Of a DNA stretch of 64,000 bases, positions 3,702-45,439 are shown in pieces. Both the position numbers and the translations under genes were made by a program. Every line of letters begins with the position of its first letter. The stretch's first letter is position 1. A model generated the notes under the pieces. It did not search any database and had not been told where the DNA came from. It saw only the letters and a list, made by a program, of their open reading frames with translations. The stretch covers positions 124,001 through 188,000 of IMG/VR virus record IMGVR_UViG_3300030385_002649. One strand, written 5' to 3'.

Positions 3702-5635
3702 ACAGTAATATCTACCTGGAACACTCTAACTTTAATTTCTCCTTGACCCTGTATTCCAGGTAGAGGAGCTTCTAGAGCGATTTGCCCACCAGCTGCGTCC
3801 GTTATTTCTATCACTATTACTTTTTCTGAGATTGGCGCTTCTTTATGAACTAACTCTACGGATGATCTCTCGCTAGCGTTATAAACCGCACTAGGAACAG
3901 GCATAGAAAACTGGACGACCGCAGCGCCCCCATCTTTCACCCTAGCTTTAAAACCCGTGCTTAAGTCAGTGTCGCCAACTATCCAATCGGTCATGCTAGA
4001 CTTGATAGCTCCGCTCTCATATTGGATAACGTAGCCACCTGGTGGTAACGTTGCGGTCGCTAAACTAGATTGCTGGCTAGGGAACATTACAGAATGAACG
4101 TCTGTGACGCCTGACGCCAGATTGGTTACTCCCAGAACTGTGTAGACCCCAAGATCAATAGCCGTGCTTGGCCCAGTTGTTCCAAACAACACCGAAGAAT
4201 AAGGGAAAATAAAAGACTGGTTATCATAGCCAGAAGCGGCCCCTCCCGCTCCTCCCGCGCCAGAGCTAGGGTGACAATCGCCAGGAGAAATGCCTAGACA
4301 GAATTCAATAGGCAATTCCCATTCGCAGGCTGCTACTTCTTGGGCCAGATTAGCCAAAATTGTCCGCGCTGACTCATCCTTGCTCTCGATGTAAGTCTTG
4401 ATTTGCTGGTTGTATTTGTCGTTTAGTTCAGAAAGTTGATCTTCGAACGCTTCTGAGGCTCTAGTAATAAAGTCACTCAATTTAACCTTGTTAACGTTGG
4501 TTGCTTGCTCAGCTTGTTCCCTGGTAAATTGTCTCGGATATTTTAGGATATCAATATCAGCGGTTCCGATGGGGTCTCCATTTGGTGGCATTAAAATTTC
4601 GAAATCGAAGCTGGTATCGTCTTGGAAAACGATAGACCTATCAATGGGGGTCGAGATAACCTGAGTGGCCGGGGTATCATTGTCAGGAGTTCTAACCTTA
4701 GCCCTGATTATGTTGAGCTGTCCAGCTGCGGCGTCCAGCTCGGCTGCAACAATCGCAGTATCAAAAATGTCGTCAATATCTATTATTTCGATGTTTGTGA
4801 GATCACTTCCTACGGCAGGCCCGGAGAAGCCCGGGTCTCCTTGTTCTCCTGCCGGACCGTCGCCTGTGCCGTCTGGACCTTTTTCGCCCTTTTCGCCCCT
4901 CTTTCCTCGCGGCCCCTTGCATCCGGGAACAACCACACACAGGTTCTCTAGAAAATCCTGGTTGATTGTCAGATTCAAGCCTGGCGGATTATCAACATTA
5001 TCACACCTAATGATATCGAGATTGCAAGCTTCATTATTATTGTTGATTGTTACCCCATCGCCGTCGACACAAGTGATGTCCAAGCTATCGCTGATGAGCA
5101 TGATGTCGCCAAGAAGGACTCCGCTCGGATTCAGTTCGGATAGATCTGCAATTTGAAAGGAATCTTCTCTAGCCGCTTCAGTGGCGTCACCCTCTACCGA
5201 GATTGTCTCGTCAGTGTTCGAAAAGATTAAGAAAGCCTTTTTCTTTAGGACCCCTGAAGTGAAGATCAACGCTTTACCATTGAAAGTGTTTGGAGTAAGA
5301 GAACGATCTTCTACAGAAGTTGGCCTAATGCTTGTCCCAGCCTCTATCGTAATTGATCTTCTGACCTTGTCTTTGTGAACAACATTAGGATTGTTTGGAA
5401 CTAGACTTAGAAGTGGCTTTGCGATAATCCCAAAGTGCCCTCCCTTATTTGGGATGCCATCAATAAGTCTCTTGAATTCAGCCGTCAACAATCCTGGTTG
5501 AAACTCGGATGCTGCTGGGATATCAGGAACTGTCCCGCTTTTTCTCCAACAGTGAGTGGACCCATCGAAGGTCCACTTGCGCCTAAAAGAATCAACAAAT
5601 ATCTGGCCATCAAATGGTTGTGGAGGCAATGACAT
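3698..5635 (-). CDS. Collagen-containing fibre/virion structural protein, paralogue of downstream gene
   Basis: N-terminus LPPQPFDGQIF...WTFDG...W typical of phage fibre proteins; GxY run GCKGPRGKRGEKGEKGPDG...GPAGEQGDPG followed by coiled coil. Confidence 0.65.
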   Translation of the reverse strand: MSLPPQPFDGQIFVDSFRRKWTFDGSTHCWRKSGTVPDIPAASEFQPGLLTAEFKRLIDGIPNKGGHFGIIAKPLLSLVPNNPNVVHKDKVRRSITIEAGTSIRPTSVEDRSLTPNTFNGKALIFTSGVLKKKAFLIFSNTDETISVEGDATEAAREDSFQIADLSELNPSGVLLGDIMLISDSLDITCVDGDGVTINNNNEACNLDIIRCDNVDNPPGLNLTINQDFLENLCVVVPGCKGPRGKRGEKGEKGPDGTGDGPAGEQGDPGFSGPAVGSDLTNIEIIDIDDIFDTAIVAAELDAAAGQLNIIRAKVRTPDNDTPATQVISTPIDRSIVFQDDTSFDFEILMPPNGDPIGTADIDILKYPRQFTREQAEQATNVNKVKLSDFITRASEAFEDQLSELNDKYNQQIKTYIESKDESARTILANLAQEVAACEWELPIEFCLGISPGDCHPSSGAGGAGGAASGYDNQSFIFPYSSVLFGTTGPSTAIDLGVYTVLGVTNLASGVTDVHSVMFPSQQSSLATATLPPGGYVIQYESGAIKSSMTDWIVGDTDLSTGFKARVKDGGAAVVQFSMPVPSAVYNASERSSVELVHKEAPISEKVIVIEITDAAGGQIALEAPLPGIQGQGEIKVRVFQVDITV

Positions 5636-15074: not shown

Positions 15075-15578
15075 ATGTCTTTGAGCGACTTCACGGTTAG
15101 AATAAGCGGCACTGTAGCTTACAGCGATAGATCACATGGTTCCTTTGAGGCATCTGCTATCTGGAAAGGCAACCTTGGTGGTGTAGTCGCTCAACACAGC
15201 AACCCGGACTCACTAGAACACTTTAGAAGATTGGCAGAGAGCAAGAGCGTCGAATTAGCTGACACGCTCGCAGTTCTCGCACCAGCCGGATCGCCACAAG
15301 GAATCGTAACTTTTGCGACCTTACCAGCTCCTGTAACTTCTAAAACAGTAACTAGTTTTGTAATGGAAGTCTCTGGTCTCATCACTGATGACGATAACTC
15401 TAAAGATGGTTTCAGCGCCCAATGGGTGAATGGAGCAGTCAACCTGTTTCCTGACGACACCGAAGTTGTGTGGCAGACTCTTACAGATCCAGCGTCCAAC
15501 CCACTAGGCGACCAAAGAAGTTTCCTAGTCATGGTTTTCGATGCGGTAGCCGGATCTGGCGAGACCACTTTATCTTAA
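15075..15578 (+). CDS. Hypothetical protein, likely virion component
   Basis: AGGAG RBS, CAAAGATA motif upstream, S/T/A/G-rich. Confidence 0.6.
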   Translation: MSLSDFTVRISGTVAYSDRSHGSFEASAIWKGNLGGVVAQHSNPDSLEHFRRLAESKSVELADTLAVLAPAGSPQGIVTFATLPAPVTSKTVTSFVMEVSGLITDDDNSKDGFSAQWVNGAVNLFPDDTEVVWQTLTDPASNPLGDQRSFLVMVFDAVAGSGETTLS

Positions 15579-22898: not shown

Positions 22899-24365
22899 AT
22901 GCCCAATTTGATAATAACCAGAACTAGAGCGACCGCACCAACAGTGTTTAGGTTGAACGGGGCCGCAATTGAAGAACTTGGTGCGGCAGGTTCTTTGGGG
23001 ACAGCCGGAGCCGTAATTGAAACCAGTGGAACCGCACAGGATCAATATCCAATAAATAGGTCTATCGTAGTCAGAGAGACAATTTACACTTTACAAAAGA
23101 AAACCAGCACCAATAGGCCAGCGATTTACAAGTTAGAAGCACCATATACAGACAACTGGTCAGAAATTGCCTCGCTAACATCAGCATCAACTCTGACTTA
23201 TCTGGCTACTGGGATTTATTCAACAATCATTGGAAACGTTCCATATATTTTTGGATTTTATTCAAGTTCAGGTGTCACTCTAGGAGGTTGGAGAATAAAT
23301 GTGCAAACCGAGGCATTAGAGTTATCAAGCACTTGGGTTACACAAACAGCACCAACGAGACTTTGCGACTGTATCATGTTCGACAATCTCTTATTCTCAA
23401 TGTCATACTCGCCAACAAGCAGAGTAAGCGCATACGACCCAACAGCCCTTAGCGGAACAGATATCATCAGCCCCGGTTTTACAGCCGAATCAGCGTCAAC
23501 AAAATTCGTAGAATGGGAAAACGAATTGTATGCTTGCGGATTAGTTAGCTCGGGCATCAGCCATTTAACACGTTATGAAGGAGGGGCTTTTGTTAGCGTA
23601 TTAAGCCTTGGCGCATCAGTGGGAGGTGCCAGCGATGATGCGAGATTCACAACTTGGGTAACGCCAGAGGATCCAAACACCAACGGGACAACAACCCTCT
23701 ACATTTTATTTTATTCATCAACTGACACTGCAACGTGGAAAGTGTGGAAATGTTCCAAAGAAACAACAGGGGGAATAACCGCAATAGACGTTTCTGACCC
23801 AGTGCTGCCAGCCGTGTTTAGAACACCAACTGTTCCAAACCTAAGAGGACGCTGGATGACATATAAGCAACAGCAAGCTGGTTTCGACCCAAGAATCTTA
23901 ATTTATCAAGCAACCGATGGAGACATTGGAGAAATCGTAAGAGAATACGAATTTATCGACGATATTACTGAGTTACAAGACAACGGTGTGGTCGGAGGAG
24001 ATGCATCATATGGATGGTCTGTAGACTCAACAGGCGGAGGAGACCGCGAAGTCACTATTGATCAACCAAGAATATCAATGGAAGGTATCCAAAGAGTGGA
24101 CGGGGCGATACAAATCTTATATCGCGCCTATGGAGGAGACATAACATCTCCATTATCTATAGAAGGTTACTGGTCTGATCTTGGGCACACACCTAAGAAC
24201 TTGATGACAATCTCCGGAGTGTCCGAGGGCACATTGGGCATGACTGGCGATGTCGTAGAAGACATCGTTGGCGATGGCACTTTAAATTCATTCAATTGGG
24301 ATTTCGCGGCAGACGGATTTATCATTGGGGAAGCGCCAACGGTTGTGCTGCGAATATTTGAATGA
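22899..24365 (+). CDS. Probable virion structural protein (beta-propeller-like)
   Basis: 488 aa, T/S/G/aromatic-rich beta pattern; CAAAAATA upstream. Confidence 0.5.
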   Translation: MPNLIITRTRATAPTVFRLNGAAIEELGAAGSLGTAGAVIETSGTAQDQYPINRSIVVRETIYTLQKKTSTNRPAIYKLEAPYTDNWSEIASLTSASTLTYLATGIYSTIIGNVPYIFGFYSSSGVTLGGWRINVQTEALELSSTWVTQTAPTRLCDCIMFDNLLFSMSYSPTSRVSAYDPTALSGTDIISPGFTAESASTKFVEWENELYACGLVSSGISHLTRYEGGAFVSVLSLGASVGGASDDARFTTWVTPEDPNTNGTTTLYILFYSSTDTATWKVWKCSKETTGGITAIDVSDPVLPAVFRTPTVPNLRGRWMTYKQQQAGFDPRILIYQATDGDIGEIVREYEFIDDITELQDNGVVGGDASYGWSVDSTGGGDREVTIDQPRISMEGIQRVDGAIQILYRAYGGDITSPLSIEGYWSDLGHTPKNLMTISGVSEGTLGMTGDVVEDIVGDGTLNSFNWDFAADGFIIGEAPTVVLRIFE

Positions 24366-25453
24366 GCACTATCGCCAATGAAAGCTTTAGTAGTGCACTC
24401 ACTCTTCCGATTGACTCACCGGTTAACGAAAGCTTTAGTAGTGCACTCACTCTTCCGATTGACTCACCGGCCAACGAAAGCTTTAGTTCTATAGCAACAT
24501 TTGTTGTCGAAGACGTAAATTCAAGTCGTCTAGAATTTACAACAACAGCTGCTTTCAATCTCAGTTCCACATACCCGGTCGCTTCAGGTTTAGACTTAAA
24601 TGTCACCGCCCAAGTTAACAAAACAGTTACGCTATCAGAGCCCGAAGGAATAGATTTCAGCGTTCTAGCTCAACTAAACATCACAAAGCTTCTGACGGCA
24701 GGAAATACATTAGAATTAGATAGCACGTCGTCCGAAGTGTCGACAAAGTCTATATCAGCCCAAAGCGACATGGACTTTGATGGAGTCTCAGTTAAAAACG
24801 TCACAGCATTTCCGATTACTGCAAGTCAGATTGATTTCGATAACGACGTTATTTCAGAAATTAAGAAGCTCATTTCTATACCAGATCTAGCTGCGTCCTT
24901 CGATCTTTCTGTAACTTCACAAATAAATATCGTAAAATTGCTGGCGGCAGAAACAACTATAGAATTTGATAATGATGGGGAAGTAACGGCCAGAGGGATT
25001 CAAGTTGTTTCAGAAAACACTATAGATCTGAGCGTCATAACAACCAATACTCCGCCTACAGAAGTGAACGCTTCAAGCGCTATCGAATTATCAAACCCCG
25101 TAGCCTCTGTGGTCGGACAGTACCACCCAGTGACGGCTCAAACAGATATCGACCTATTAAGCCGTTACCCAAACACAAAAATGGCCGACTCTAGTAACGG
25201 CTTCAACCTTAGGGACAGAATATTCGACCCTGTAAAGATAAAAGCGAAATCAGCTAACAAAAGCACCCTTATCAGGGTCAAGAATATTTCTTCTCAGTTA
25301 CTGAGAATAGGTCAAACAAACGGGCAATCTATTACCCTTGGGCCTAACAAGTTCATTGTGGTTCCTCAATCGTCCATCAGCAGTTCACAATTAAACAGGT
25401 TGATTAAACTTAAATTCATTGAAGTAATTGGCTCTAACATCAGGAATCTCTAA
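24362..25453 (+). CDS. Repetitive S/T-rich structural protein
   Basis: N-terminal NESFSSALTLPIDSP repeats followed by periodic ~25-30 aa beta repeats. Confidence 0.55.
   Translation: MSTIANESFSSALTLPIDSPVNESFSSALTLPIDSPANESFSSIATFVVEDVNSSRLEFTTTAAFNLSSTYPVASGLDLNVTAQVNKTVTLSEPEGIDFSVLAQLNITKLLTAGNTLELDSTSSEVSTKSISAQSDMDFDGVSVKNVTAFPITASQIDFDNDVISEIKKLISIPDLAASFDLSVTSQINIVKLLAAETTIEFDNDGEVTARGIQVVSENTIDLSVITTNTPPTEVNASSAIELSNPVASVVGQYHPVTAQTDIDLLSRYPNTKMADSSNGFNLRDRIFDPVKIKAKSANKSTLIRVKNISSQLLRIGQTNGQSITLGPNKFIVVPQSSISSSQLNRLIKLKFIEVIGSNIRNL
24374..24487 (+). repeat. 48-bp tandem repeat, ~2.3 copies, in frame
   Basis: gaaagctttagtagtgcactcactcttccgattgactcaccgg occurs twice identically, plus a partial third copy. 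Confidence 0.95.
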
Positions 25454-26343
25454 TGAAACACATACTAGCAATTTTTCTAGCTTTATTGCTAGTATGTCCC
25501 GTCTTCTCAGACGAAGTGACCGGTCATTCCTTTGTAAATCCAGACCATCTTAACCTCTATTCTATTGATCTGCCGATAATCAAGAGAGATGAAGATAACT
25601 TATTATCACAAGTCACTTTCAACAACAACGTCTGTGGTTCCGTAAAAGCAAAATACGTCGGATTTTATGGCATAATAACTGGAGAAGCCGAAAAAAGGTT
25701 GAAACGATACTCTAGGCGTCAAACTCGAATCATGTTCAACAACAGTAACATGAGTTTCGCCGAGGCCGGAGCTAGAATGGCCGCTCTGGGCCAAAAACAC
25801 AACCCGTACGGAGATTGGTGGGATCGTTCTTGGTTCCATAGCCTTCCGCCTGAAAAAGGAGGTGCCTCACTTAAACAGACAGAAGTTCAAATCGGACAAG
25901 AGTTCAACGCTCCCAATTGGCAGATCGTGAACTGGGGTAAGCACCAAATCGAAAGGCTAGGGGACGTCTGGCTTACTAATGATCAAGCATATGAAGGGAC
26001 TGAAGATGGAGACGTCCTCACAGTTCCTGGAGAACAGCCAATTCAGTCTAATGGGAAAAGATTAAACAAATACAATGGTCGCGACGAAGCTGACGTGGTC
26101 ATCGACCAAACTCCTTGGTTTCTAGGAGACTTTTATCATTTCAGATTTAAGCCTTCATTAAGAATCAGAGGTGGTCCAAACATCGACGATATGATTGATG
26201 AATTATCTCTCAGATTTGTCGTCGAACTTTACACATCAGACAAGCTAAGAAATCACTTCGGCAATGTTTCATTCTTTGCAAGATATAATATCCCAGACAA
26301 TGAATATCTTACAAGTATTACGTTCGATCTTGTGACCTGGTAA
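25453..26343 (+). CDS. Secreted/envelope protein with Sec signal peptide
   Basis: MKHILAIFLALLLVCPVFS signal; C-terminal amphipathic beta strands ending in W. Confidence 0.6.
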   Translation: MKHILAIFLALLLVCPVFSDEVTGHSFVNPDHLNLYSIDLPIIKRDEDNLLSQVTFNNNVCGSVKAKYVGFYGIITGEAEKRLKRYSRRQTRIMFNNSNMSFAEAGARMAALGQKHNPYGDWWDRSWFHSLPPEKGGASLKQTEVQIGQEFNAPNWQIVNWGKHQIERLGDVWLTNDQAYEGTEDGDVLTVPGEQPIQSNGKRLNKYNGRDEADVVIDQTPWFLGDFYHFRFKPSLRIRGGPNIDDMIDELSLRFVVELYTSDKLRNHFGNVSFFARYNIPDNEYLTSITFDLVTW

Positions 26344-26830
26344 TCGCCACTTTCAAAATTTCAGAGCACTTGTGTGCATAGCTAATCTTAGGATAAGGGT
26401 GTTTCGTCCTAACCCACTGATCTAAGACGCTTTGTCGGGGACCCGCAACATTAAGCACCCTAGCCTTAGTCTTCTCTAGCCATTTCGATATTTTTTCGAT
26501 GTTCTCCTCAAATCCGTCACATGCGTCGATAACCTCATAAGGGACGTCATGTCGCTGACAAAGCTTGATAGTTAAAGAAGTCCCACGAGAATAATGCATA
26601 GCGGGCTTAAAAATGAGCGTTGCATCGGAGTCTAAAATATTCTGTTCAGTTCGCATAGCGTACCCAGGAGCCGGATATTCCTTCAACTCATATAGTCCTG
26701 GAACGTGACCATCCTCAGCCGTGAAGTATTTAGGAGCCCAGCCACCAATTTTGAGCCCCAAGAAAATCCCTACATTTAAACCGACTCTATCAATGCCAGT
26801 CTGTCCACCTGAAATAATTTTAGTAATCAT
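26318..26830 (-). CDS. SLOG-superfamily protein (putative molybdenum carrier family)
   Basis: KIISGGQTGIDR.GL, GGWAPK...AEDG, Y..RTEQNILDSDATLIF, GT.LT, VLNVAGPR.S. Confidence 0.88.
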   Translation of the reverse strand: MITKIISGGQTGIDRVGLNVGIFLGLKIGGWAPKYFTAEDGHVPGLYELKEYPAPGYAMRTEQNILDSDATLIFKPAMHYSRGTSLTIKLCQRHDVPYEVIDACDGFEENIEKISKWLEKTKARVLNVAGPRQSVLDQWVRTKHPYPKISYAHKCSEILKVAITRSQDRT

Positions 26831-26857
26831 GATAAGCCTTATCTTTATAAAATACAG

Positions 26858-26886
26858 AAACGCCCCCGAGGGATTAGCTCGGGGGT
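26858..26886 (-). terminator. Rho-independent terminator after the TROVE gene
   Basis: CCCCCGAG-ctaatcc-CTCGGGGG stem followed by cgtttctgtatttt on the minus strand. Confidence 0.8.
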
Positions 26887-26894
26887 GATCTGAC

Positions 26895-28544
26895 TTACTG
26901 TTGGGTTTGCGTATAAATGCTGTTCATAGCGCCCGCGAAGCGCAGCAAGTTCGCGCTCCAGCCTCCAAAGATGAAGGTCTTGTCGTAGAACTCAGGAACA
27001 ATGGTGTCACGGTATCCCGCGATTTGTACCAAGTAAACCATGACGTTCGGGTTGACCTTAGTACGGTAGTCCGCGATCAACTTTGGAACATCGACATATG
27101 CCATAGCGTGGTTCTTCTTGTTCATATAGGCGTAGTTTCCTAGGCCATTCTTGTTATAACCGTATAGCCCGCCATGACCGGCTTGCATGTCAGAGTAAAC
27201 GAACACGTGGTCCCAATGCTCCTTCTGCTTGATAGCCTTGTCCCAGAATACCCAAACGCCGTTCTCTGTGCCATTCCCGATTGTCCGAGCAGCTATTTCC
27301 GCTTCCTTTAGCTGATCGAAGATAGAAGAACGCTTACGGATTCTGTTTTCCTTCAACTTGTCACCGAAGACACCAAGGTAGCCCTCATCTGCCCTCATTC
27401 CAGTAATTACACCAGTAAGGTTTCCGATTGTAGAGATTTTCATCTCGCCAAGTTCAGAAGTAGAAGTGCCCTGAGCCGAGGCGCTGTTGTCACACAACGA
27501 CATAACACGACCCTTAAAGCGAGGCAAGTTGCCGAGCGATACGATCATGCATTCTTCGATAGCGTCAAGCAACGACGGATCCGCCATGTCCTGAATAGCC
27601 TTATAAGCGCTGTAATACCTGAAAGGAAGTTGCCTACCCTTGTCAGCGCCCTTTACCAACTTATCCTTATAAGTGTCCACAGAAACTCCATGCTTGATGA
27701 AGTTACGAAGGTTCCTAAGTAGAGCCATGTGACCCATAACCTTAGCCGACTCTTCCCAGGACTTCTGGTTAGAACCCTTTTCAGAAGTGATAGACTCCCA
27801 GGTCTTGCCAGTTGACTTCAAGTTACCCTTCATCAACTTATCGATAGCCTCGCTCTTAGCGTGCACCAAGTTGATGACGTCTACAGTCTTAACACCACGG
27901 TTTTCCAGGCGATACTTACCAAGTTGATACTCATCGTATCCTTCCAAAGAGTCCTTAAGAGCACGCTTCAAACGAGTAGGAATTGGCTTCCCAAAAGCAG
28001 ACAACTGATAAGCTAGACAGGTTGCCGGTTCATCCGCACGACGGATGATCTTCTTAGCATAAGCACGGATAAGGTTTGTTCCCTTAGAACCAGCATGGTT
28101 AGCTGCTCTAACTAGGATGACCTGAGGAGTAGCGCGAATGTTATCGCTGTTACGCAACGACACTGCTACTTGAAGAGTACGCTCAACATCAGCGTCTAGT
28201 GCCGAATCGATTACGCCCTCCATCAACTCCTTAGAAGTCTTGCCACGCCACTCTGGGGGATCGAGAGCCGTAAGAGAGCTACGAATGTGCTTAGCCTCTG
28301 CCGCTGCCAACGAGCTGATGCTAGTGTACTTCTGTCCGAAAGCGCCCACACTAGCTGCGGCCGCACGCTTGTTTCTTTTCTCGTCAGTTTCATGATAAAA
28401 CTTCGGCTCACCGAAGAAACACGAAGCCGCAGCGATGTGCAGACGGAGAAATGGATCATTGATGTCGTAAGATGGAGCACCCATTTCGTTCATATGCGCT
28501 CGTGCGCGGACCTTAGGCAGGGTCTTAGTGTTGATCTTGCTCAT
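26895..28544 (-). CDS. TROVE-domain (Ro60/Rsr, TEP1-like subgroup) RNA-binding protein with vWA domain
   Basis: NEMGAPSY, FFGEPKFY, IRRADE, DEYQLGKY, TWE, MGHMALLRNLRN, QLPFRYYSAY; vWA MIDAS-like DNSASA...T...SDMQ; strong RBS. Confidence 0.9.
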   Translation of the reverse strand: MSKINTKTLPKVRARAHMNEMGAPSYDINDPFLRLHIAAASCFFGEPKFYHETDEKRNKRAAAASVGAFGQKYTSISSLAAAEAKHIRSSLTALDPPEWRGKTSKELMEGVIDSALDADVERTLQVAVSLRNSDNIRATPQVILVRAANHAGSKGTNLIRAYAKKIIRRADEPATCLAYQLSAFGKPIPTRLKRALKDSLEGYDEYQLGKYRLENRGVKTVDVINLVHAKSEAIDKLMKGNLKSTGKTWESITSEKGSNQKSWEESAKVMGHMALLRNLRNFIKHGVSVDTYKDKLVKGADKGRQLPFRYYSAYKAIQDMADPSLLDAIEECMIVSLGNLPRFKGRVMSLCDNSASAQGTSTSELGEMKISTIGNLTGVITGMRADEGYLGVFGDKLKENRIRKRSSIFDQLKEAEIAARTIGNGTENGVWVFWDKAIKQKEHWDHVFVYSDMQAGHGGLYGYNKNGLGNYAYMNKKNHAMAYVDVPKLIADYRTKVNPNVMVYLVQIAGYRDTIVPEFYDKTFIFGGWSANLLRFAGAMNSIYTQTQQ

Positions 28545-28554
28545 GATTTACTTC

Positions 28555-28652
28555 CTTTTCGGAGATAAGAGGCTCGGCCTCAATACCAAATAGACGGGAC
28601 AAGTCATTCAGCCTGTCGCGTTCGTCTCAGATACGGTCATCGCCGTTTCCGA
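28555..28652 (-). ncRNA. Candidate Y-RNA-like / Ro-binding structured RNA directly upstream of the TROVE gene
   Basis: Consecutive hairpins (ACGG-cgauga-CCGU; AGACG..GACAGG-cugaauga-CUUGUC..CGUCU; GAGGC-cga-GCCUC) and GACGAACG = GNCGAANG. Confidence 0.4.
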
Positions 28653-28681
28653 AGACAATTTTTTCAAAAATAACTGTAGGC

Positions 28682-29032
28682 GTGTTAAACATGGTATTAG
28701 CTAACCAAGACTTGAGTGTTCTCCAAATTCTGCTAGATGGCGGAGTCCCACTTCTATTGTTGATTGCACTGATCGTAGTAAGTAAATTATACTACGCAGA
28801 ACGCAATATTCGTACAGCAGAAATGGGAAATTACAGAGATGAAGTTAGCGCGCTAAAGACGGATTACTCCAATAAAGTTGAGTCACTGCTAAGAGAAAGA
28901 CTCGAATCGGAAACCGAAAATACAAAAGTTATTTTGCGGGCGACCGAAGCGATGAGTTCAGTTAATGGCACTCTAGAGCATACCAACACAACACTAAAAC
29001 GATTTATAGAGGCTACCGATGCAACATCCTGA
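28682..29032 (+). CDS. Holin-like single-TM protein with coiled coil
   Basis: GGVPLLLLIALIVVSKLYY TM followed by coiled coil; CAAAAATA upstream; start may be the ATG at 28691. Confidence 0.45.
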   Translation: MLNMVLANQDLSVLQILLDGGVPLLLLIALIVVSKLYYAERNIRTAEMGNYRDEVSALKTDYSNKVESLLRERLESETENTKVILRATEAMSSVNGTLEHTNTTLKRFIEATDATS

Positions 29033-29270
29033 TCTAGAACAGGCGCTCAAAGACTTAAAAAGTAAGAAGCGCGCCACTATAGTAGAATTCACCAGGAAAA
29101 CGATAGACGCAATCAACCTGAGTGAGGAAGCAACCCTCACTCATCTTAGCATAACAGACAGTAAATGCGACGCACTCTGTAGAACTAAGAAATTTGAAAA
29201 AAGCAGGATTTTAGATGAGGAAGTGCCTGTAGAAGCCTCCGTCGATTCTTCTGCAGAAGACGCGGCCTAG
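29019..29270 (+). CDS. Hypothetical protein
   Basis: 83-aa ORF overlapping the holin-like gene. Confidence 0.5.
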   Translation: MQHPDLEQALKDLKSKKRATIVEFTRKTIDAINLSEEATLTHLSITDSKCDALCRTKKFEKSRILDEEVPVEASVDSSAEDAA

Positions 29271-29331
29271 ACTTAATTCGCACCATTTTCGGCATTCTCA
29301 CACACGTAACGTTGCATCACCTGCATATAAT

Positions 29332-29478
29332 TCATCGTGTGATCGCAATCCCAGCGGCCCATTCTACCAGATTGATAAATCCAGTAAAAAGCAACGCTCC
29401 GCCGATTACCGCAGCGCCAACAAAAGCGATTTCAATAGCAAGATTCGCATAATAGTTCCTGTTATCAAGTTTCTTCAT
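29332..29478 (-). CDS. Small membrane protein (48 aa)
   Basis: MKKLDNRNYYANLAIEIAFVGAAVIGGALLFTGFINLVEWAAGIAITR. Confidence 0.45.
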   Translation of the reverse strand: MKKLDNRNYYANLAIEIAFVGAAVIGGALLFTGFINLVEWAAGIAITR

Positions 29479-29542
29479 GGTATCGTCCAAACAACAGTGG
29501 GAGCCCATTTATTTGCAATTTTCATATCAATTATATACATAC

Positions 29543-29583
29543 AACGAGACCCCCAAGGTATTTCTATCTTGAGGGTCTCGCTG
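29543..29583 (-). terminator. Strong hairpin, probable terminator
   Basis: CGAGACCCUCAAG-loop-CUUGGGGGUCUCG followed by uuguauguauau. Confidence 0.65.
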
Positions 29584-29585
29584 TA

Positions 29586-29641
29586 AGACGGGGACTCAGG
29601 GGTCCTTTATTCAACTGAAGGGCTGAGTATAAGTCGCGTCT
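29586..29641 (-). ncRNA. Second structured RNA candidate related to the TROVE-upstream element
   Basis: AGACG/CGUCU outer stem, ACUCAG/CUGAGU and CCUU/AAGG inner stems, UUGAAUA loop; shares AGAC..GCGAC...UGAAU...GUCCC(C)GUCU with 28592-28627. Confidence 0.35.
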
Positions 29642-29655
29642 ATTATAAATTTGCC

Positions 29656-30924
<1,269 letters not shown>

Positions 30925-33268: not shown

Positions 33269-34804
33269 TTATAGGTTCGAAACTGTAACGACACCGTAGT
33301 AGAGGCCACCGTCTTCGATCAGCTTTTTACCATAACGAGTCATGATTCCCTTGTTCGGGGTGAACGAGTTAGGATCTAGTACGGTTGGTGTGCTGAGAAG
33401 TGGGATGTATGGAGCGTAGAAGTAACCACTGTCTAGGACACTGTTACCCTTGAAGCCCATGAGGATCTTGCAGTTAGGGAAGAGTGGATCCTTGTAGAGC
33501 TTGAGCTTTCCTTGGATCGTTCCTGCGGTGGTGATTCCGACGTCGATTCCGTCTTGTGCGAGGGCGTCTGAACCACGGAAGTCGTTCAGTTGCTCGAACT
33601 TGGAGGCGATATCAGCACTTGTAACCATCCAGTTAGCTGGGCCACGGAGGGTCAAGCGGTGGATGACGTTTGCAACTTCAAGAGTCTTGTAGAGCAAAGC
33701 GATGTTACGGTCGGTGAAGTTGACGGATGCACCTGCGCCTGTGGCGAAGTTGTGCGTCGCGCGGACTGCGGAAGCGATGATGAGGTCGTTGATGATCTCA
33801 CGGTCGATTTCTGCAACCATTTCGTCAGCCATAAGATCCGTTAGCGTCGACTCGGCGTCGATGTTGTGGACGGACTTGAGGTCCTGAGCAGCTTCAAGGG
33901 ACCAAGAGGTCTTGAGCTTACGAGTGATAGCGGCAACCGAATCACTGTCGATGCTGAGGGTCACTTCTGGCTGGAACGGGTTGTTCTCAAGGTCGAACTC
34001 GTAATCAGCTCTAGCTATAGCGCCCGCTGGGAGCACGCCTGCTGCTAGAGTGATGGTCACAGTACCGGTCGAGTGATCGAACTGTGTAGCACCAGTCGTG
34101 CTGTCGTCAACTGCGACACCCGTTGCATCACCGACTAGGATGAGGTCTGGGTTTCCGTCGCTGTCGAAACCAACTTGGAGAATTGGCGTTGGATCTTCGC
34201 AGGTGTCAACATCTTCACGGAAGACGTTGACTACAACCGTACCAGCGAGAACTGGGCGGTGTGCGAGGGTTCCGCTGACAACCGTTCCGGTTCCGTCAAC
34301 TGTTAGGTCTTCACCCTTGACCTCTTGCGAGGAGTAATAAGGATCAAGTGCCCAACCGTTTTGGCGAGCAAACTGCTGTGCAGTGTTCTGACGCATGATT
34401 TGCGTACCGGCAACTGTTTGGCCCTTAGAAAGAGCGTAACGGTACCTGATGTAGAAAATCAAGCTGGCAGGCTGACTCATTGGCTGAACACCAACGAGGT
34501 TGTCAGCAATTAGCTTCGGATAACTCTTACGAATAAGAGGCAACGCGAATCTGGTGAAGTCAGCGATGTCGCCGGTTGTGGTTGAATCCTCAAGAAGTAC
34601 GCTGCGTCCCTTTGGGTCCCAGTGGTTCAACTGGTTCTCTAGAATTGCGGACATTAGGCCGAATTTTTGAGATGGGATTTCCTTGCATTTCTTAAGAACT
34701 GGCGACCACTTGCGGATCATCTGGTTCTTCTTAGATTCGCGAATCAGTGTTTGTTCGCGAAGCTTGCTAGCTTCAGCTAGCATTTGGTTTTGGGAAAAAT
34801 TCAT
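33269..34804 (-). CDS. gp23: Major capsid protein, T4 gp23-like
   Basis: KWSPVL, ILENQ, LVGVQPMSQP..LIF, RKLKTSWSLEAAQDL..H.IDAE, EIDREII, GYFYAPYIPL, DPNSFTP.KGIMTRYG. Confidence 0.97.
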   Translation of the reverse strand: MNFSQNQMLAEASKLREQTLIRESKKNQMIRKWSPVLKKCKEIPSQKFGLMSAILENQLNHWDPKGRSVLLEDSTTTGDIADFTRFALPLIRKSYPKLIADNLVGVQPMSQPASLIFYIRYRYALSKGQTVAGTQIMRQNTAQQFARQNGWALDPYYSSQEVKGEDLTVDGTGTVVSGTLAHRPVLAGTVVVNVFREDVDTCEDPTPILQVGFDSDGNPDLILVGDATGVAVDDSTTGATQFDHSTGTVTITLAAGVLPAGAIARADYEFDLENNPFQPEVTLSIDSDSVAAITRKLKTSWSLEAAQDLKSVHNIDAESTLTDLMADEMVAEIDREIINDLIIASAVRATHNFATGAGASVNFTDRNIALLYKTLEVANVIHRLTLRGPANWMVTSADIASKFEQLNDFRGSDALAQDGIDVGITTAGTIQGKLKLYKDPLFPNCKILMGFKGNSVLDSGYFYAPYIPLLSTPTVLDPNSFTPNKGIMTRYGKKLIEDGGLYYGVVTVSNL

Positions 34805-41746: not shown

Positions 41747-44700
41747 TTATCGCTTGAAGTACTTTAACACGTGTTTCTTAAAAGAAACACTATCGTTAGG
41801 TTTTCCGCTACTGGTATTTTTACCCAACGGGTGACTACCCAATTGAGATGCAAATCTAGCCACTTCACTAGTGGCATCAACCTTACCTACCCATCCTTCA
41901 GATGACAAATTTACAGGAGCCAACGCATCCCTACCACCTTTAATTAACAGAGCCCTATGCTTGTCAGGATGAATAACCGGTTCCAACATTCTACTAGAGA
42001 TGTCCATATTGTGCAGAGGGGCCAAATTGTACCCCTGTGTCAAAATCGCTTCAGGTATACCAATAAGAGCAAAACACGCGGCCAACACGAGGTCATCAGT
42101 GTTTCCAGTGCCTGGTTCGTTTCCATATCGACCACCACCAAGATGGATGAAGATACACAATTCTCTATAAAGCCTAGGCGACTTGATTGTCCATCCGTCG
42201 ATTCCAACATTATCTTTCAGACATTTTACGAGAATGTGCTTCGTGGTATTAGATGTTGGAAATCCGGTCTTGTTATACTTCATCTTAAGGTTAGTCGTCT
42301 GAGTCTTGTGGCGGTATAACGTTGGGTACATCAATTCGTACTCAAGTTCTTGGCACAACGTAGCACCAATGCCGGTCCTCTCAGGGACGATTAACGCATT
42401 ATTATACAACCTGCCAACATAATCAGCCATTCTAGCGAACATCTTAGGCAGAACTCTCATCCTAAGTTCTGCCACTTGTTCTTGAGTGTCTACATCGAAG
42501 ATTTCCAACGTAGAATAATCATCCGCTTCTCCTGTAGACGGGTCAGCGCCAACAATATAGAGGTGAGCGCGTTTAGCGTGTTCAGGCAACGAATCTAGTG
42601 TGCCATCACGGCGAGCCTTAGCCATTTCCCGGTCTGCATCAGCCTGAGTGAACGGTTCGTCCCAAATCCAAAATTGCTCCTGGAAATCAAGAACTGTGCG
42701 AACATCCTGAGAAGGATTTATGTATTCTACAGAATCTAGTACCTTATACTTGTCTCCGTACTCGGCAACCATTCTTTCTAATTCAAACAGCGCGTTACGG
42801 TTTAGAACAGTGTGACCAGAGCCTAAGAATTCAGCCAACACTTCTTGTCTAAAAGCGCTATCATCACCCTTAGTAGAGAGGTCGTCATATTGAGTTTCTA
42901 GCCATGGGCTCCAATAAGGGCCATATTTCTCAATGTCCTCTTTTTTCTCTAGTTTTTTCATTTCTCTTGTTGGAGAAATAACGGTTTTGTTACCAGAAAG
43001 CTCATCTACGAAGTCTAGGCTCCAGTCCATATTCCACCAGTTGATGAGAATAGGATTAAAATTATTTTCTTTATCAACAGCCGCTGACCAGGTCTTATAA
43101 TACCAGTTGCCAACACCCTTTGGAGTGCTAATAACAATACAAGAGCCACCCGTCTGCATAGTATTATGAGAGACAAAACCATTAGCAACATAAGTATTAT
43201 TGCCAGGAACACTAATGTCGACCGTAAAAGATTTAGATTTCACAACCGAAACAACCTCATCTATAAAAATCCCATCCTTCACAACATATTTAATAGGATC
43301 CCTCCGAGAAGCTACGCGAACTATGTCGCATTTTTTCCTTTCAGAAATAAACCCAATATCGCTCATAAATTTAATGCGGTTGTCAAGATTTAAAATCTCT
43401 AACCGATAAGATTCTTTACTATTTTCAAATCCTCCTTTTTTAATTGTTTTTCTAGAAATGATCCCTAAATTGAGGAGCATTACTTGAACTAGCCTGGCCA
43501 ATTTTTCAGAAATTGACGAAAACCCAATACTATAAATTATAGAATTGGGCCTATACTTATCATCATATTGATAACACCATCCATCAGCTTCGAACAGTCC
43601 TCTCAGAAACGCTTTATGAATCTTTTGGCTAGATTTCATAATCATCTCTGGTATAGTCGCATTATGCGCATGTGTTTTGCAATGAAAATGCTTTTCAAAC
43701 CACTTCACAAAAGGAGAACTATTAACCCTAAATTCCCCAGCGCCATTAGAAATCCTATCACTGTGATCTAAGCCAATTGAATTAAAGTAACTACCAAAGT
43801 GCCCTGAAACGTCAGAATCTTGAGGATCATAAGATAGCAAAAACCTATGCGGTCTCTTATTAACAATGCAGCCATCACCAACATAATAACCAATAAGTTC
43901 AGCAAGCCTTTCGTCCAATATCTTGGGCTTATTGAAGCCCTTACCCATCTTTAAAACCGGAGCGCAATCAAAACATATAAACTTATTGCTATTTCTTTTA
44001 AAATTGCGCTTATAAGTTCTATAATTCACAGAAACTGTTTTGCTACAATTAAAACAAATTGGGCTTACAGTATCAGCATTTTTTGCCTCAATAAAAAGAG
44101 TAGGGAACTGGTCGACATTATTGATATAAGTGTCAAATTCGACATCAAAATCAGAGCCGCACTTTAACGAAAGTTTCTGGCTAAGATCGACATCTTTAGA
44201 ATAGACCCATTCATATTGATCATCCTTAAGCCTATGATTGCCAGTGCATTCTATTTCATACCCCAGCTTAGTAGTTATAATGTTGGTAGAAGCAATGCCA
44301 TTTATATAAAACTTGTCAGAGTTCTTTATACAAAAGTCAGATTGTACCTCAACATCGATATCCTGCCATTGACCTCCATTTAAATCCCCTAAAGACCCTA
44401 TCTCCACCAAAGACCCTTCAGATGATATGAGAGAGTCTGGTCTTATGCATGAGAAGCCGCCCTTCCACATATCATCCATGTGTTGAATAAACGCGGCCTC
44501 ATCGATAATGTTTAGCGAAGAAGCGTTGGATCGGAGAGTGTCAGGGTTGGATGTTAGAGACCGAATCATCGATCCATTTTGGAAACCTAGGGAGTGCTCG
44601 TTCATAACGTCTGGTTTCCATAAGTCCTTCATCCACTTTGGAAGGTGCTTATAGACGAACTTGATGTTACGATCTAGGTAGTTCTTAGCGTCAGGGTCAG

Positions 44701-45439
44701 TACGCGATACGATGAGGACAGTCTTGTTGTTGAAGAACATCGCGTACCACAAAGCGAAAGCACCAGAAAGCGTGGAAATGCCAACCTGTCTACAATTATG
44801 AACGACTGAGCCGTCAACTATAAAATTGCTATGTGGAGGCACTTCTAAGTCGTACGTCTTAACTTTCTTGTGCGGTTTTATAGATAGGACTTGACCCTTT
44901 TCGCGATTGAAGAAGAAGCCCTTTTTTGTGGTGTCTTGGCATTTTGGCTCTTTTCCAAAAGTGCCGATTTCTGAATCATAAATTTCTACAAGCACATCAT
45001 TTTGTGTTAAATCTCCTACTTCGACCCAGCCTCTTCTTGTGAGATATTCATGATCGGCTGTAGCATACGATTTGTGACCAGTTTTTGTTCTAACCTCGAA
45101 TGTATCTTTCATACCATTTTCTAAAGTAGAAAGAACTGGGGCGGTCTCTACAGTTCCTGATTGCTCATTATATGTATAGACCAGATCTCCGATTTTAATG
45201 TTTTCGATATTTATGGGCCCTTTTGGAGTCCATACAGGGCTCCCTTCGGCCAGACACTTTCTGAAAATGTTAAAACGATGGGTTGTGAAGTCCTTTAGAC
45301 ATTTCTTCTGATAGCCGAACAACTTGAATTTAATGATTCCAAGCTTTGGATGCTTTACTTTACAAAAGTTGTTGATGAAGAACTCTGGGTCCTGTTGGCA
45401 TCTTTTGATGATTTTAGCTAGGGTTGGGTGTACAGCCAC
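41747..45439 (-). CDS. gp17: Terminase large subunit, T4 gp17-like, with two inteins
   Basis: F.LFGYQ, K|CRQVGIST Walker A, IIDEAAFI Walker B, VISTPKG, FRQEV.AEF, GADPSTG, DDLVLA. Confidence 0.96.
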   Translation of the reverse strand: MAVHPTLAKIIKRCQQDPEFFINNFCKVKHPKLGIIKFKLFGYQKKCLKDFTTHRFNIFRKCLAEGSPVWTPKGPINIENIKIGDLVYTYNEQSGTVETAPVLSTLENGMKDTFEVRTKTGHKSYATADHEYLTRRGWVEVGDLTQNDVLVEIYDSEIGTFGKEPKCQDTTKKGFFFNREKGQVLSIKPHKKVKTYDLEVPPHSNFIVDGSVVHNCRQVGISTLSGAFALWYAMFFNNKTVLIVSRTDPDAKNYLDRNIKFVYKHLPKWMKDLWKPDVMNEHSLGFQNGSMIRSLTSNPDTLRSNASSLNIIDEAAFIQHMDDMWKGGFSCIRPDSLISSEGSLVEIGSLGDLNGGQWQDIDVEVQSDFCIKNSDKFYINGIASTNIITTKLGYEIECTGNHRLKDDQYEWVYSKDVDLSQKLSLKCGSDFDVEFDTYINNVDQFPTLFIEAKNADTVSPICFNCSKTVSVNYRTYKRNFKRNSNKFICFDCAPVLKMGKGFNKPKILDERLAELIGYYVGDGCIVNKRPHRFLLSYDPQDSDVSGHFGSYFNSIGLDHSDRISNGAGEFRVNSSPFVKWFEKHFHCKTHAHNATIPEMIMKSSQKIHKAFLRGLFEADGWCYQYDDKYRPNSIIYSIGFSSISEKLARLVQVMLLNLGIISRKTIKKGGFENSKESYRLEILNLDNRIKFMSDIGFISERKKCDIVRVASRRDPIKYVVKDGIFIDEVVSVVKSKSFTVDISVPGNNTYVANGFVSHNTMQTGGSCIVISTPKGVGNWYYKTWSAAVDKENNFNPILINWWNMDWSLDFVDELSGNKTVISPTREMKKLEKKEDIEKYGPYWSPWLETQYDDLSTKGDDSAFRQEVLAEFLGSGHTVLNRNALFELERMVAEYGDKYKVLDSVEYINPSQDVRTVLDFQEQFWIWDEPFTQADADREMAKARRDGTLDSLPEHAKRAHLYIVGADPSTGEADDYSTLEIFDVDTQEQVAELRMRVLPKMFARMADYVGRLYNNALIVPERTGIGATLCQELEYELMYPTLYRHKTQTTNLKMKYNKTGFPTSNTTKHILVKCLKDNVGIDGWTIKSPRLYRELCIFIHLGGGRYGNEPGTGNTDDLVLAACFALIGIPEAILTQGYNLAPLHNMDISSRMLEPVIHPDKHRALLIKGGRDALAPVNLSSEGWVGKVDATSEVARFASQLGSHPLGKNTSSGKPNDSVSFKKHVLKYFKR
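43163..44449 (-). mobile_element. Intein (429 aa) with LAGLIDADG homing endonuclease in terminase
   Basis: CIRPDSLI start, IECTGNH, LAELIGYYVGDG and FLRGLFEADG, TVDISV..NTYVANGFVSHN|T end. Confidence 0.93.
44795..45256 (-). mobile_element. Mini-intein (154 aa) in terminase Walker A
   Basis: CLAEGSPV start, ATADH, TYDLEV..HSNFIVDGSVVHN|C end; too short for an endonuclease. Confidence 0.93.

What the first reader, a model, noticed from the sequence alone, without database searches (positions are those of the whole stretch)
26318..29655. Phage Ro60/TROVE locus with two related candidate Y-like RNAs
Seen: a full TROVE+vWA gene with its own terminator. Directly upstream lies a run of hairpins; the central one (28592-28627, minus strand AGACGAACGCGACAGG-CUGAAUGA-CUUGUCCCGUCU) contains GACGAACG opposite CUUGUC. 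About 1 kb further upstream, a second intergenic stem-loop (29586-29641), followed by a strong hairpin, shares AGAC..GCGAC, a UGAAU loop and GUCCC(C)GUCU. Established: Ro60/Rsr proteins bind Y RNAs encoded nearby, bacterial Y RNAs carry a GNCGAAN(0-1)G 5'-strand motif, and Ro RNPs act in RNA decay/repair; some phages are known to carry Ro. Inference: this is a phage Ro ribonucleoprotein using short non-tRNA-like partner RNAs (no T-arm seen, so not YrlA-like), possibly countering host RNA-damage defences. The proximal element may instead be an autoregulatory leader.
Basis: partly seen in the sequence, partly recalled or inferred. Interest (0 to 1): 0.85.

Follow-up and report, generated by a model that had tools for sequence, protein, structure and literature searches.

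The report
Phage Ro60 gene, unsupported Y-RNA candidates
A marine giant phage carries a genuine Ro60-type RNA-binding ring protein, but the two small hairpins proposed as its partner RNAs show no conservation, no significant similarity to each other, and no match to the partner RNAs found beside most related genes.

Summary
The gene is real. ORF 26895-28544(-) is a full-length Ro60/Rsr orthologue with a TROVE ring, a vWA domain, an intact MIDAS motif and its own terminator. It sits in a T4-like jumbo phage that was also assembled from Tara Oceans data. Both hairpins exist exactly as written, but they are weak.

- **Stability:** their folding z-scores are about -1.9.
- **Mutual similarity:** it is no better than chance (330 of 2000 shuffles score as well).
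- **Motif:** GNCGAAN0-1G occurs 53 times in the window and is not enriched upstream of homologues.
- **Known families:** Rfam finds no Y RNA, YrlA or tRNA-like element anywhere in the 64 kb.

Comparison with 230+ homologous loci shows what the partner RNAs of this TROVE clade look like. They are 1-6 tandem copies of a covarying element with the signature AGUGA / GG-UUACUUC / UUCUC. The short form is YrlB-like and the long form carries a YrlA-like tRNA mimic. They were found upstream in 103 of 153 loci searched, always on the gene's strand.

A covariance model of this element finds nothing in the window (best E = 1.9) and nothing in its two closest relatives. Synteny suggests the upstream region was remodelled in this lineage.

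The proximal hairpin is most likely part of the TROVE mRNA leader. The distal hairpin is most likely the 3'-UTR and terminator region of the upstream gene.

The parts
26895..28544 (-). Ro60/Rsr orthologue (TROVE HEAT-repeat ring plus vWA domain with MIDAS), 549 aa
   Evidence: Pfam TROVE 2.7e-13. phrog_850 3e-38. Nearest solved sequence is Thermus phage phiLo Ro60, 9l5y/9kop, E = 3e-17. The AF2 model has pLDDT 78 and pTM 0.73. Its 13 best Foldseek PDB hits are all Ro60/Rsr: 9kop, 9l5y, 1yvp, 2nvo, 9nen, with E from 1e-9 to 4e-16. The MIDAS residues D352-x-S354-x-S356, T426 and D452 are invariant in 24 homologues.
26863..26885 (-). Intrinsic terminator after the Ro60 gene
   Evidence: 8-bp stem (7 G-C), 7-nt loop, T-rich tail. 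It lies between the TROVE stop codon and the cpYpsA start codon.
26318..26830 (-). cpYpsA (circularly permuted YpsA, SLOG) gene downstream of Ro60
   Evidence: Pfam PF12694, 1.8e-40. It has no counterpart in any of the related loci tested, so it is an insertion specific to this phage.
28545..28681 (-). 137-nt divergent spacer between Ro60 (-) and a 116-aa ORF (+). It probably holds the promoter and 5' leader of the Ro60 mRNA and contains three hairpins.
   Evidence: ORF map. Fold -38.7 kcal/mol, z = -2.6 on the minus strand against -1.7 on the plus strand. No sigma-70-like promoter was called in it.
28592..28627 (-). Proximal candidate hairpin: 5-bp outer stem, AACGC/C internal loop, 6-bp inner stem, 8-nt loop. 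It carries GACGAACG.
   Evidence: Sequence and fold: -10.3 kcal/mol, z = -1.96. No Rfam match. No match to model R1. Not conserved in L162 or L163.
28545..28576 (-). Shine-Dalgarno region of Ro60 (UUAUCUCC-GAAAA-GGAAGUAA-AUC before the AUG). It is a degenerate look-alike of a leader motif seen in some relatives.
   Evidence: for the sequences. for the motif in relatives: 14 of 178 leaders against 0.86 in shuffles. The window has AGUAA where relatives have AGUGA, so it fails the pattern.
28682..29270 (+). Two small opposite-strand ORFs (116 aa with a TM helix; 83 aa). They are part of a ~1.1-kb segment absent from the closest relatives.
   Evidence: ORF list. Only a weak FtsL_2 match. No PHROG match. 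No homologue in related loci.
29332..29508 (-). 58-aa ORF (hydrophobic C-terminal half), part of the same inserted segment
   Evidence: No family match.
29586..29641 (-). Distal candidate hairpin, in the 3' untranslated region of the upstream gene. It has no CGAA motif.
   Evidence: Sequence and fold: -12.3 kcal/mol, z = -1.84. No Rfam or R1 match.
29540..29585 (-). Strong hairpin followed by a U-rich tract: the intrinsic terminator of the upstream PPC/collagen-like gene
   Evidence: Fold. L162 and L163 have a strong terminator hairpin in the same position after the homologous gene.
29656..30924 (-). Secreted-looking protein with an N-terminal PPC-like domain, a collagen repeat and a long poly-Asp tail. 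Its homologue lies directly upstream of Ro60 in the closest relatives.
   Evidence: Pfam Collagen 2.9e-8. 31-34% identity over the N-terminal 140-150 aa to the genes upstream of TROVE in L162 and L163. L162's copy carries Pfam PPC.

Best explanation
The locus is an ordinary, intact phage Ro60/Rsr gene: a ring-shaped TROVE protein with a vWA/MIDAS domain. By homology it binds structured or misfolded RNAs and probably modulates host RNA decay. In this phage lineage it has lost the adjacent partner-RNA genes that accompany most close homologues.

The two hairpins are most likely not Ro partner RNAs. The proximal one lies in the short divergent spacer that must hold the Ro60 promoter and 5' leader, so it is probably leader structure. 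The distal one is 3'-UTR structure just before the intrinsic terminator of the upstream PPC/collagen-like gene.

Shown: gene identity, fold, terminators, synteny, absence of any known or clade-typical Y-like RNA in the 64 kb, and lack of conservation of the hairpins. Inferred: the roles of the hairpins, and the loss (rather than relocation) of the RNA genes.
For: **Protein.**

**Partner RNAs of the clade.**
- A 62-75-nt element has this layout: stem P1, an AGUGA/UUCUC internal loop, stem P2, then a loop starting UUACUUC. A 127-148-nt form carries a permuted tRNA-like insert.
- P2 shows compensatory changes at 8 of 8 pairs, although I did not select for it.
- Among 126 model matches, P1 is 96% paired and P2 81% paired, against about 60% in shuffles.
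- 69 hits fall in 41 of 73 viral loci and 79 hits in 62 of 80 genome loci. All are on the TROVE strand, and nearly all lie within about 600 nt upstream.
- Long forms align end to end with Rfam YrlA at 26-42 bits, E down to 8e-6.

**Window.**
- Model R1 with filters off gives at best 9.7 bits, E = 1.9, and nothing near the gene.
- Rfam in gathering and E-value modes finds no Y_RNA, YrlA or tRNA. ARAGORN finds none.

**Hairpins.**
- They are only marginally stable.
- They are not similar to each other above chance.
- The motif is at chance level and is not enriched upstream of homologues: 13 sense against 12 antisense occurrences in 88 loci without the R1 signature motif upstream.
- blastn, nhmmer and a profile of the L162/L163 spacers detect no conservation.

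**Synteny.** L162 and L163 have the order PPC gene, terminator, TROVE, then a convergent 296-aa-family gene. The window has this order plus a 1.1-kb insert and the cpYpsA gene. L164 belongs to the same lineage (61% identity, same downstream gene) and still has R1 elements.
Against: - The proximal hairpin does place GACGAACG at a stem/internal-loop junction on the 5' strand, as in the Ro-binding module of canonical YrlA (Rfam consensus cggCgaAUGC).
- Only 4 of the 53 motif copies in the window sit in so compact a stem context. The joint chance is therefore roughly 0.5-3%, although this was computed after the fact.
- Thermus phage phiLo Ro60 binds two short CGAA-bearing hairpin RNAs encoded upstream of its gene (PMC12135203), so there is a precedent for short non-tRNA-like partners.
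- The minus-strand spacer is more structured than its shuffles (z = -2.6).
- Only 64 kb of a 370.8-kb genome could be searched, so relocation of the RNA genes cannot be told apart from loss.
- No expression or binding data exist.
Confidence: 0.6

Rival explanations
1. The proximal hairpin, possibly with the distal one, is a minimal YrlB- or phiLo-Yrl-like partner RNA. It would be processed from the Ro60 leader, bound by the phage Ro60 through the GNCGAANG/CGAA element, and would replace the lost YrlA/YrlB-type genes in this subclade.
For: - The motif and its stem-bulge-stem context fit.
- It lies immediately upstream on the gene's strand, where relatives keep their RNAs, often with no terminator in between. 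In L010, for example, the element ends at the start codon.
- phiLo provides a precedent (PMC12135203).
- The subclade lacks the canonical element, so something else could serve.
Against: - It is not conserved in L162 or L163.
- The motif is not enriched upstream of homologues.
- In this clade the position equivalent to CGAA reads CGG[U/A]UAC.
- The distal element has no CGAA, and the two are not significantly alike.
- Stability is marginal.
- The phiLo criteria are loose: CGAA occurs 4.3 times per kb per strand here.
Confidence: 0.12
2. The proximal spacer is an autoregulatory leader. The Ro60 protein, or an R1-type RNA made elsewhere, binds the 5' UTR or Shine-Dalgarno region and controls translation of its own mRNA.
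For: - In relatives, 14 of 178 leaders carry a permuted copy of the R1 protein-binding module (UUCUC, short stem, N-AGUGA) abutting the Shine-Dalgarno sequence. Shuffles give 0.86 +/- 0.9, the reverse complement gives 1, and a stretch inside the gene gives 0.
- The window has the near-cognate UUAUCUCC-GAAAA-GGAAGUAA at the same place.
- GGAAGUAA is fully complementary to the invariant R1 loop UUACUUCC.
Against: - The window's version fails the pattern: it has AGUAA rather than the invariant AGUGA, and only a 2-3-bp stem.
- The purine run is what any Shine-Dalgarno sequence looks like.
- Only a minority of relatives show the motif.
Confidence: 0.13
3. The cognate YrlA/YrlB-type RNAs of this phage exist but are encoded outside the 64-kb window, for example in a tRNA cluster elsewhere in the 370.8-kb genome. 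The hairpins here would then be irrelevant. This reading is compatible with the best explanation apart from loss versus relocation.
For: - In some relatives the elements lie downstream of the gene or several kb from it (L105, L141, L015, L030, L197).
- They often sit inside phage tRNA arrays.
- The window holds no tRNA at all, which is unusual for a jumbo phage and suggests its tRNA region lies elsewhere.
- The protein is highly conserved: 55-70% identity to homologues, most of which have R1 elements nearby.
Against: Most hits lie within 600 nt of the gene. The two closest relatives also lack them on their contigs, although those contigs are short at 5.8 and 6.7 kb. This was not testable here.
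Confidence: 0.3

Closest known systems
Bacterial and phage Ro60 (Rsr) with YrlA/YrlB Y RNAs (Chen et al. 2014, PMC4201824; Rfam RF02553)
   Same: The domain architecture and fold are the same. Close homologues of this very gene are flanked on the same strand by YrlA-like tRNA-mimic RNAs and by short YrlB-like RNAs.
   Different: This window has no YrlA-like, YrlB-like or tRNA-like RNA within 64 kb. In the clade the conserved 5' motif reads CGG[U/A]UACUUC instead of GNCGAAN0-1G. There is also an extra basal module, P1 plus an AGUGA/UUCUC loop, that the Rfam model does not cover. The clade's long forms score only 26-42 bits against Rfam's cut-off of 69.
Thermus phage phiLo Ro60 with Yrl1/Yrl2 (PMC12135203; PDB 9L5Y, 9KOP)
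   Same: It is the nearest solved structure by sequence (E = 3e-17) and by fold (TM 0.60-0.71).
   Different: Identity is only about 21-28%. The phiLo RNAs were bound in vitro (EMSA, cryo-EM), whereas nothing is known for the window's hairpins. phiLo has no R1-type element. In the window only the proximal hairpin has CGAA.
Bacillus phage G gp540 (TROVE) locus
   Same: It is the best cultured-phage relative (37.7% identity). It is a jumbo phage, the gene lies near tRNA genes, and three significant variant R1 copies plus a weaker fourth lie upstream.
   Different: The window lacks those RNA copies and has no tRNAs.
Metazoan Ro60-Y RNA and D. radiodurans Rsr-Yrn1-PNPase (RYPER)
   Same: The ring fold is the same (1yvp, 2nvo, 9nen). 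The expected mode of action is a Y RNA that gates the ring and tethers an exonuclease. This is established knowledge, not tested here.
   Different: Sequence identity is 14-15%. There is no Rfam Y_RNA match. No PNPase, RtcB or other RNA-repair gene is present in the window.

Membership tests
Ro60/Rsr protein family | TROVE domain detectable by sequence | tested here: met
   Pfam PF05731, 2.7e-13, 50 bits against a cut-off of 23. The match is partial, covering residues 245-321. phrog_850 covers residues 84-537.
Ro60/Rsr protein family | Ring of HEAT-like repeats closed by a C-terminal vWA domain | tested here: met
   AF2 model with pLDDT 78. Foldseek finds whole-length matches only to Ro60/Rsr structures, E from 4e-16 to 1e-9, with 483-558 aligned columns.
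Ro60/Rsr protein family | MIDAS motif (DxSxS ... T ... D) in the vWA domain | tested here: met
   D352, S354, S356, T426 and D452 are invariant across 24 homologues.
Ro60/Rsr protein family | Binds Y RNA or misfolded RNA | not testable with these tools
   Needs EMSA or RIP.
YrlA (Rfam RF02553) | Covariance-model score at or above the gathering score | tested here: not met
   No match in gathering mode, and none even at E <= 5-10.
YrlA (Rfam RF02553) | tRNA-like domain (T arm, D arm, capped acceptor stem) | tested here: not met
   ARAGORN finds 0 genes. There are no tRNA-clan Rfam hits.
YrlA/YrlB | GNCGAAN0-1G near the 5' end, within 4 kb of Ro60 and on its strand | tested here: inconclusive
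   The proximal hairpin has GACGAACG and the distal has none. The chance expectation is 5.5% per 137 nt. The motif is not enriched upstream of homologues.
Clade-specific Y-like element (model R1; short form and YrlA-like long form) | P1, AGUGA/UUCUC internal loop, P2, then a loop starting UUACUUC, upstream of TROVE on its strand | tested here: not met
   Best hit in the window is 9.7 bits, E = 1.9, far from the gene. Within 28500-29700 the best is 4.2 bits or less. Relatives score 20-74 bits.
phiLo-type Yrl RNAs | Stem-bulge-stem hairpin with CGAA, upstream of a phage Ro60 gene | tested here: inconclusive
   The proximal hairpin fits this loose description and the distal does not. The description has little discriminating power, because CGAA occurs 4.3 times per kb per strand.
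phiLo-type Yrl RNAs | Bound by the cognate Ro60 in vitro | not testable with these tools
   Not applicable.
Metazoan-type Y RNA (Rfam RF00019) | Covariance-model match | tested here: not met
   No match.

The most novel reading that the evidence does not exclude
The window/L162/L163 subclade of jumbo-phage Ro60 proteins has abandoned the YrlA/YrlB-type RNAs of its relatives. It now uses a very short (about 36 nt) leader-derived hairpin with a canonical GNCGAANG bulge as a minimal Y RNA. This would be the smallest Ro partner known, and a natural experiment in partner-RNA replacement.
Probability: 0.1. Interest if true: 0.55.

Novelty: new member of a known kind. Interest (0 to 1): 0.3.

Why it matters
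As given, the finding adds one more phage Ro60 gene to a known class. Phage Ro60 genes have been recorded since 2014, and one was characterised structurally in 2025. The proposed RNAs do not survive comparative testing.

The comparison itself is useful. It defines what the partner RNAs of this large TROVE clade look like, in jumbo phages, Myxococcota and Chloroflexota. It also shows that this phage and its two closest relatives are exceptions that lack them next to the gene. That makes them a test case for whether a phage Ro60 can work without a dedicated Y RNA, with a host RNA, or with a minimal substitute.

Tried and rejected
1. I searched both spacers by blastn-short and nhmmer against 162 homologous loci. 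Only chance-level hits came back.
2. I saw by eye a shared pattern G[CU]GACAG-N16-CGUC-N-AU between the proximal hairpin and the first hairpin of L162 and L163. MAFFT preferred a different register. An nhmmer profile of the L162/L163 spacers did not find either window element among its top hits. I therefore rejected the pattern as unsupported.
3. I tried reading the whole proximal spacer as a degenerate R1 element (GAUGA ... UUAUCUCC). The model gives 4 bits or less, so I rejected it.
4. A weak R1 fragment at 15335-15384(-) is antisense inside a plus-strand ORF, so it is noise. The two GGTTACTTC copies in the window are not near the Ro60 gene. The one at 3051 has no AGUGA upstream, and the one at 33419 lies within the major head gene.
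5. I scanned IMG/VR for AGTGA-N5-10-GGTTACTTC to look for the element elsewhere in this phage's contig. It was uninformative for this genome.
6. A TATAAT at 29642-29647 could be a promoter for the distal element. However, a start 6-8 nt downstream would fall inside the outer stem, and there is no -35 element. This does not support an independent sRNA gene.
7. I considered building a covariance model from the two window hairpins. Their alignment is structurally inconsistent, so I abandoned it.
8. The supplementary tables of Chen et al. 2014 are not held. I could not check whether they had already listed Sorangium or phage G RNAs.

Full report
**What is there.** The window is part of a 370.8-kb IMG/VR viral contig. 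A Tara Oceans scaffold is 100% identical over window 23898-29683. The surrounding genes mark a T4-like jumbo phage:
- T4-type portal;
- intein-bearing large terminase;
- major head protein and head protease;
- an intein-bearing UvrD helicase, ribonucleotide reductase and superoxide dismutase.

No similar cultured phage exists at the DNA level.

**The protein.** ORF 26895-28544(-) encodes 549 aa.
- It matches Pfam TROVE at 2.7e-13 and PHROG 850 'RNA-binding protein' at 3e-38.
- By sequence the nearest solved structure is the Ro60 of Thermus phage phiLo (E = 3e-17).
- An AlphaFold2 model (pLDDT 78, pTM 0.73) finds whole-length matches only to Ro60/Rsr structures: phiLo, Xenopus, human and Deinococcus (E from 4e-16 to 1e-9).
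- The MIDAS residues D352-x-S354-x-S356, T426 and D452 are invariant in 24 homologues.
- A G+C-rich hairpin with a T tail at 26863-26885 terminates the gene.

The finding's interval also holds a cpYpsA SLOG gene at 26318-26830 (1.8e-40). None of the related loci has this gene.

**The two hairpins.** Both sequences are exactly as quoted.
- *Position.* The proximal one lies in a 137-nt spacer between Ro60 (-) and a 116-aa ORF on the opposite strand. That spacer must hold two divergent promoters and leaders. The distal one lies between the stop codon of a PPC/collagen-like/poly-Asp gene (29656-30924) and a very stable terminator hairpin (29540-29585).
- *Stability.* Each hairpin is marginal on its own (z = -1.96 and -1.84). 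In the best fold CUUGUC pairs with GACAGG, not with the GACGAACG motif.
- *Motif.* GNCGAAN0-1G occurs 53 times in the window. The chance of one in the 137-nt spacer on the right strand is 5.5%. Only 4 of the 53 copies sit in as compact a stem context, so the configuration is mildly unusual, but this was assessed after the fact.
- *Mutual similarity.* It does not exceed chance. The best local alignment is a 7-mer. 330 of 2000 shuffles match it, and so do 20% of all tiles of the window.
- *Known families.* Rfam finds no Y RNA, YrlA or tRNA-like RNA in gathering mode over the whole window, or in E-value mode over the locus and over the whole window. ARAGORN finds no tRNA.

**What relatives show.** The protein has thousands of homologues at 35-70% identity in large phage contigs and in chromosomes of Sorangium, Polyangium, other Myxococcota, Chloroflexota and others.

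Reading their upstream regions revealed a recurring element on the gene's strand. It has this layout:
- a basal stem P1;
- an internal loop with invariant AGUGA on the 5' side and UUCUC on the 3' side;
- a second stem P2 ending in GG/CC;
- a loop that starts UUACUUC.

Short forms are 62-75 nt. Long forms (127-148 nt) carry a T arm, a capped acceptor-like hairpin and a D arm in the loop.

The evidence that this element is real is as follows.
- P1 complementarity was part of my extraction rule, so it is not independent evidence in the seed alignment. P2 was not selected, and it shows compensatory changes at 8 of 8 pairs.
- A covariance model (R1) then found 69 hits in 41 of 73 viral loci and 79 hits in 62 of 80 genome loci. 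Every hit was on the TROVE strand, and nearly all were within about 600 nt upstream.
- In 126 aligned matches P1 is 96% paired and P2 81% paired, against about 60% in shuffles and 42-55% with slid partners.
- The long forms align over the whole Rfam YrlA model at 26-42 bits (cut-off 69), with E down to 8e-6. The clade's CGG[U/A]UACUU aligns to YrlA's CGAAUGCUU.
- Bacillus phage G has three significant variant copies, and a weaker fourth, upstream of gp540. phiLo has none.

These are therefore divergent YrlA-like and YrlB-like RNAs, and they are the expected partners of this TROVE clade.

**The window lacks them.** R1 with filters off over all 64 kb gives at best 9.7 bits (E = 1.9), away from the gene. 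Inside 28500-29700 nothing exceeds 4.2 bits.

The two closest relatives lack them too on their short contigs. These are L162 (69% identity) and L163 (67%), which are 83% identical to each other.

Synteny explains the layout.
- In L162 and L163 the homologue of the PPC/poly-Asp gene sits directly upstream of TROVE, followed by a small hairpin and a strong terminator. A homologue of window ORF 25453-26343 converges downstream.
- The window has the same order, plus a 1.1-kb insert of three small ORFs between that terminator and Ro60, plus the cpYpsA gene.
- L164 (61% identity, same downstream gene) still has R1 elements, a tRNA-like sequence and a tmRNA gene nearby.

So the subclade's upstream region was remodelled and the RNA genes were lost or moved.

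Neither window hairpin is conserved in L162 or L163 by blastn, nhmmer or profile search. A resemblance I saw by eye did not survive testing. The canonical motif is also not enriched upstream of homologues: in the 88 loci without the R1 signature motif upstream, it occurs 13 times on the sense strand, 12 times on the antisense strand and 17 times inside the gene.

**Most likely reading.** This is a functional phage Ro60 whose adjacent Y-like RNA genes are missing from this stretch. The proximal hairpin is leader or promoter-region structure of the Ro60 mRNA. The distal hairpin is 3'-UTR structure ahead of the upstream gene's terminator. I put this at about 0.6.

The alternatives are:
- A minimal phiLo-like partner RNA. 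It is supported only by the motif's context and the phiLo precedent (PMC12135203). About 0.12.
- An autoregulatory leader. About 0.13. In relatives a permuted copy of the P1 + UUCUC/AGUGA module abuts the Shine-Dalgarno sequence in 14 of 178 leaders, against 0.86 expected. The window has only a degenerate version with AGUAA.
- Relocation of the RNA genes elsewhere in the 370-kb genome. This stays open, because only 64 kb could be searched. About 0.3, and not exclusive of the main reading.

**Comparison and novelty.** The protein is a new member of a known kind. Phage Ro60 genes were noted in 2014 (PMC4201824), and one was characterised with two upstream Y-like RNAs in 2025 (PMC12135203). The RNA claim is not supported. 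The absence of clade-typical RNAs next to a well-conserved Ro60 is the only unusual point.

**Limits.** There are no expression or binding data. The subclade has only three members, two of them on short contigs. E-values from R1 are rough because of the shortened calibration. The alignment used for the large pair count was fitted to the model.

Noticed in passing
Related loci, e.g. L086:2829-2895, L092:2304-2978 (five copies, plus a sixth at 4979-5089), L016:2442-2966, L025:2587-2951, L164:1741-1810, L084:2623-2753 (long form): A conserved, covarying RNA family lies upstream of this TROVE clade, in 1-6 tandem copies on the gene's strand. Its layout is P1, an AGUGA/UUCUC loop, P2, then a loop starting UUACUUC. 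Long forms contain a permuted tRNA-like domain and match Rfam YrlA only below threshold (26-42 bits against 69). The short form and the basal P1/loop module are not covered by any Rfam model. I could not check whether Chen et al. 2014 already listed these RNAs.
   Followed up: yes
Leaders of TROVE genes in relatives, e.g. L171 about 2780-2821, L173 about 2960-3000, L170 about 825-865, L199 about 2950-2988, L183, L187, L191, L008, L176: Some TROVE mRNA leaders carry UUCUC, a short hairpin and N-AGUGA directly at the Shine-Dalgarno sequence or start codon. This is a circularly permuted copy of the RNA element's P1 plus internal loop. It occurs in 14 of 178 leaders against 0.86 in shuffles. It suggests autoregulation by the protein, but is untested.
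   Followed up: partly
window:28545-28560 (-) and relatives' Shine-Dalgarno regions: The Shine-Dalgarno stretch GGAAGU(G/A)A of many TROVE genes, including the window's GGAAGUAA, is complementary to the invariant loop UUACUUC(C) of the Y-like element. This could be coincidence with a purine-rich Shine-Dalgarno sequence, or it could be an antisense contact.
   Followed up: no
L016, L020, L031, L032, L035, L036, L039, L141, L092, L008:1902-2242, L164:4242-4656: In many phage (and some bacterial) loci the TROVE gene is embedded in tRNA gene arrays on the same strand, and in two cases lies next to a phage tmRNA gene. The window has no tRNA in 64 kb.
   Followed up: partly
window:26318-26830 (-): A cpYpsA (circularly permuted YpsA, SLOG) gene lies immediately downstream of Ro60, after the Ro60 terminator. 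None of the related loci tested has it.
   Followed up: partly
window:29656-30924 (-): This 422-aa protein has a signal-like N-terminus, a PPC-like domain, a collagen G-x-y repeat and a C-terminal run of about 40 Asp. Homologues with Asp/His-rich tails sit directly upstream of TROVE in L162 and L163.
   Followed up: partly
window:28682-29508: A segment of about 1.1 kb carries two plus-strand small ORFs (116 aa with a TM helix; 83 aa) and a 58-aa minus-strand ORF. It is absent from the syntenic loci L162 and L163 and has no family match, so it looks like a moron-like insertion.
   Followed up: partly
window:11834-14731 (-) and 41747-45439 (-): The UvrD-type helicase and the T4-type large terminase both carry inteins. 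The terminase intein includes a LAGLIDADG domain.
   Followed up: no
window:5891-6529 (-): Phage-encoded Fe/Mn superoxide dismutase.
   Followed up: no
window:23898-29683 = L165:1-5786: A Tara Oceans scaffold (TARA_R100001244_G_scaffold25113_4, 137 kb) is 100% identical over this stretch, so the phage is marine and was assembled independently twice.
   Followed up: yes
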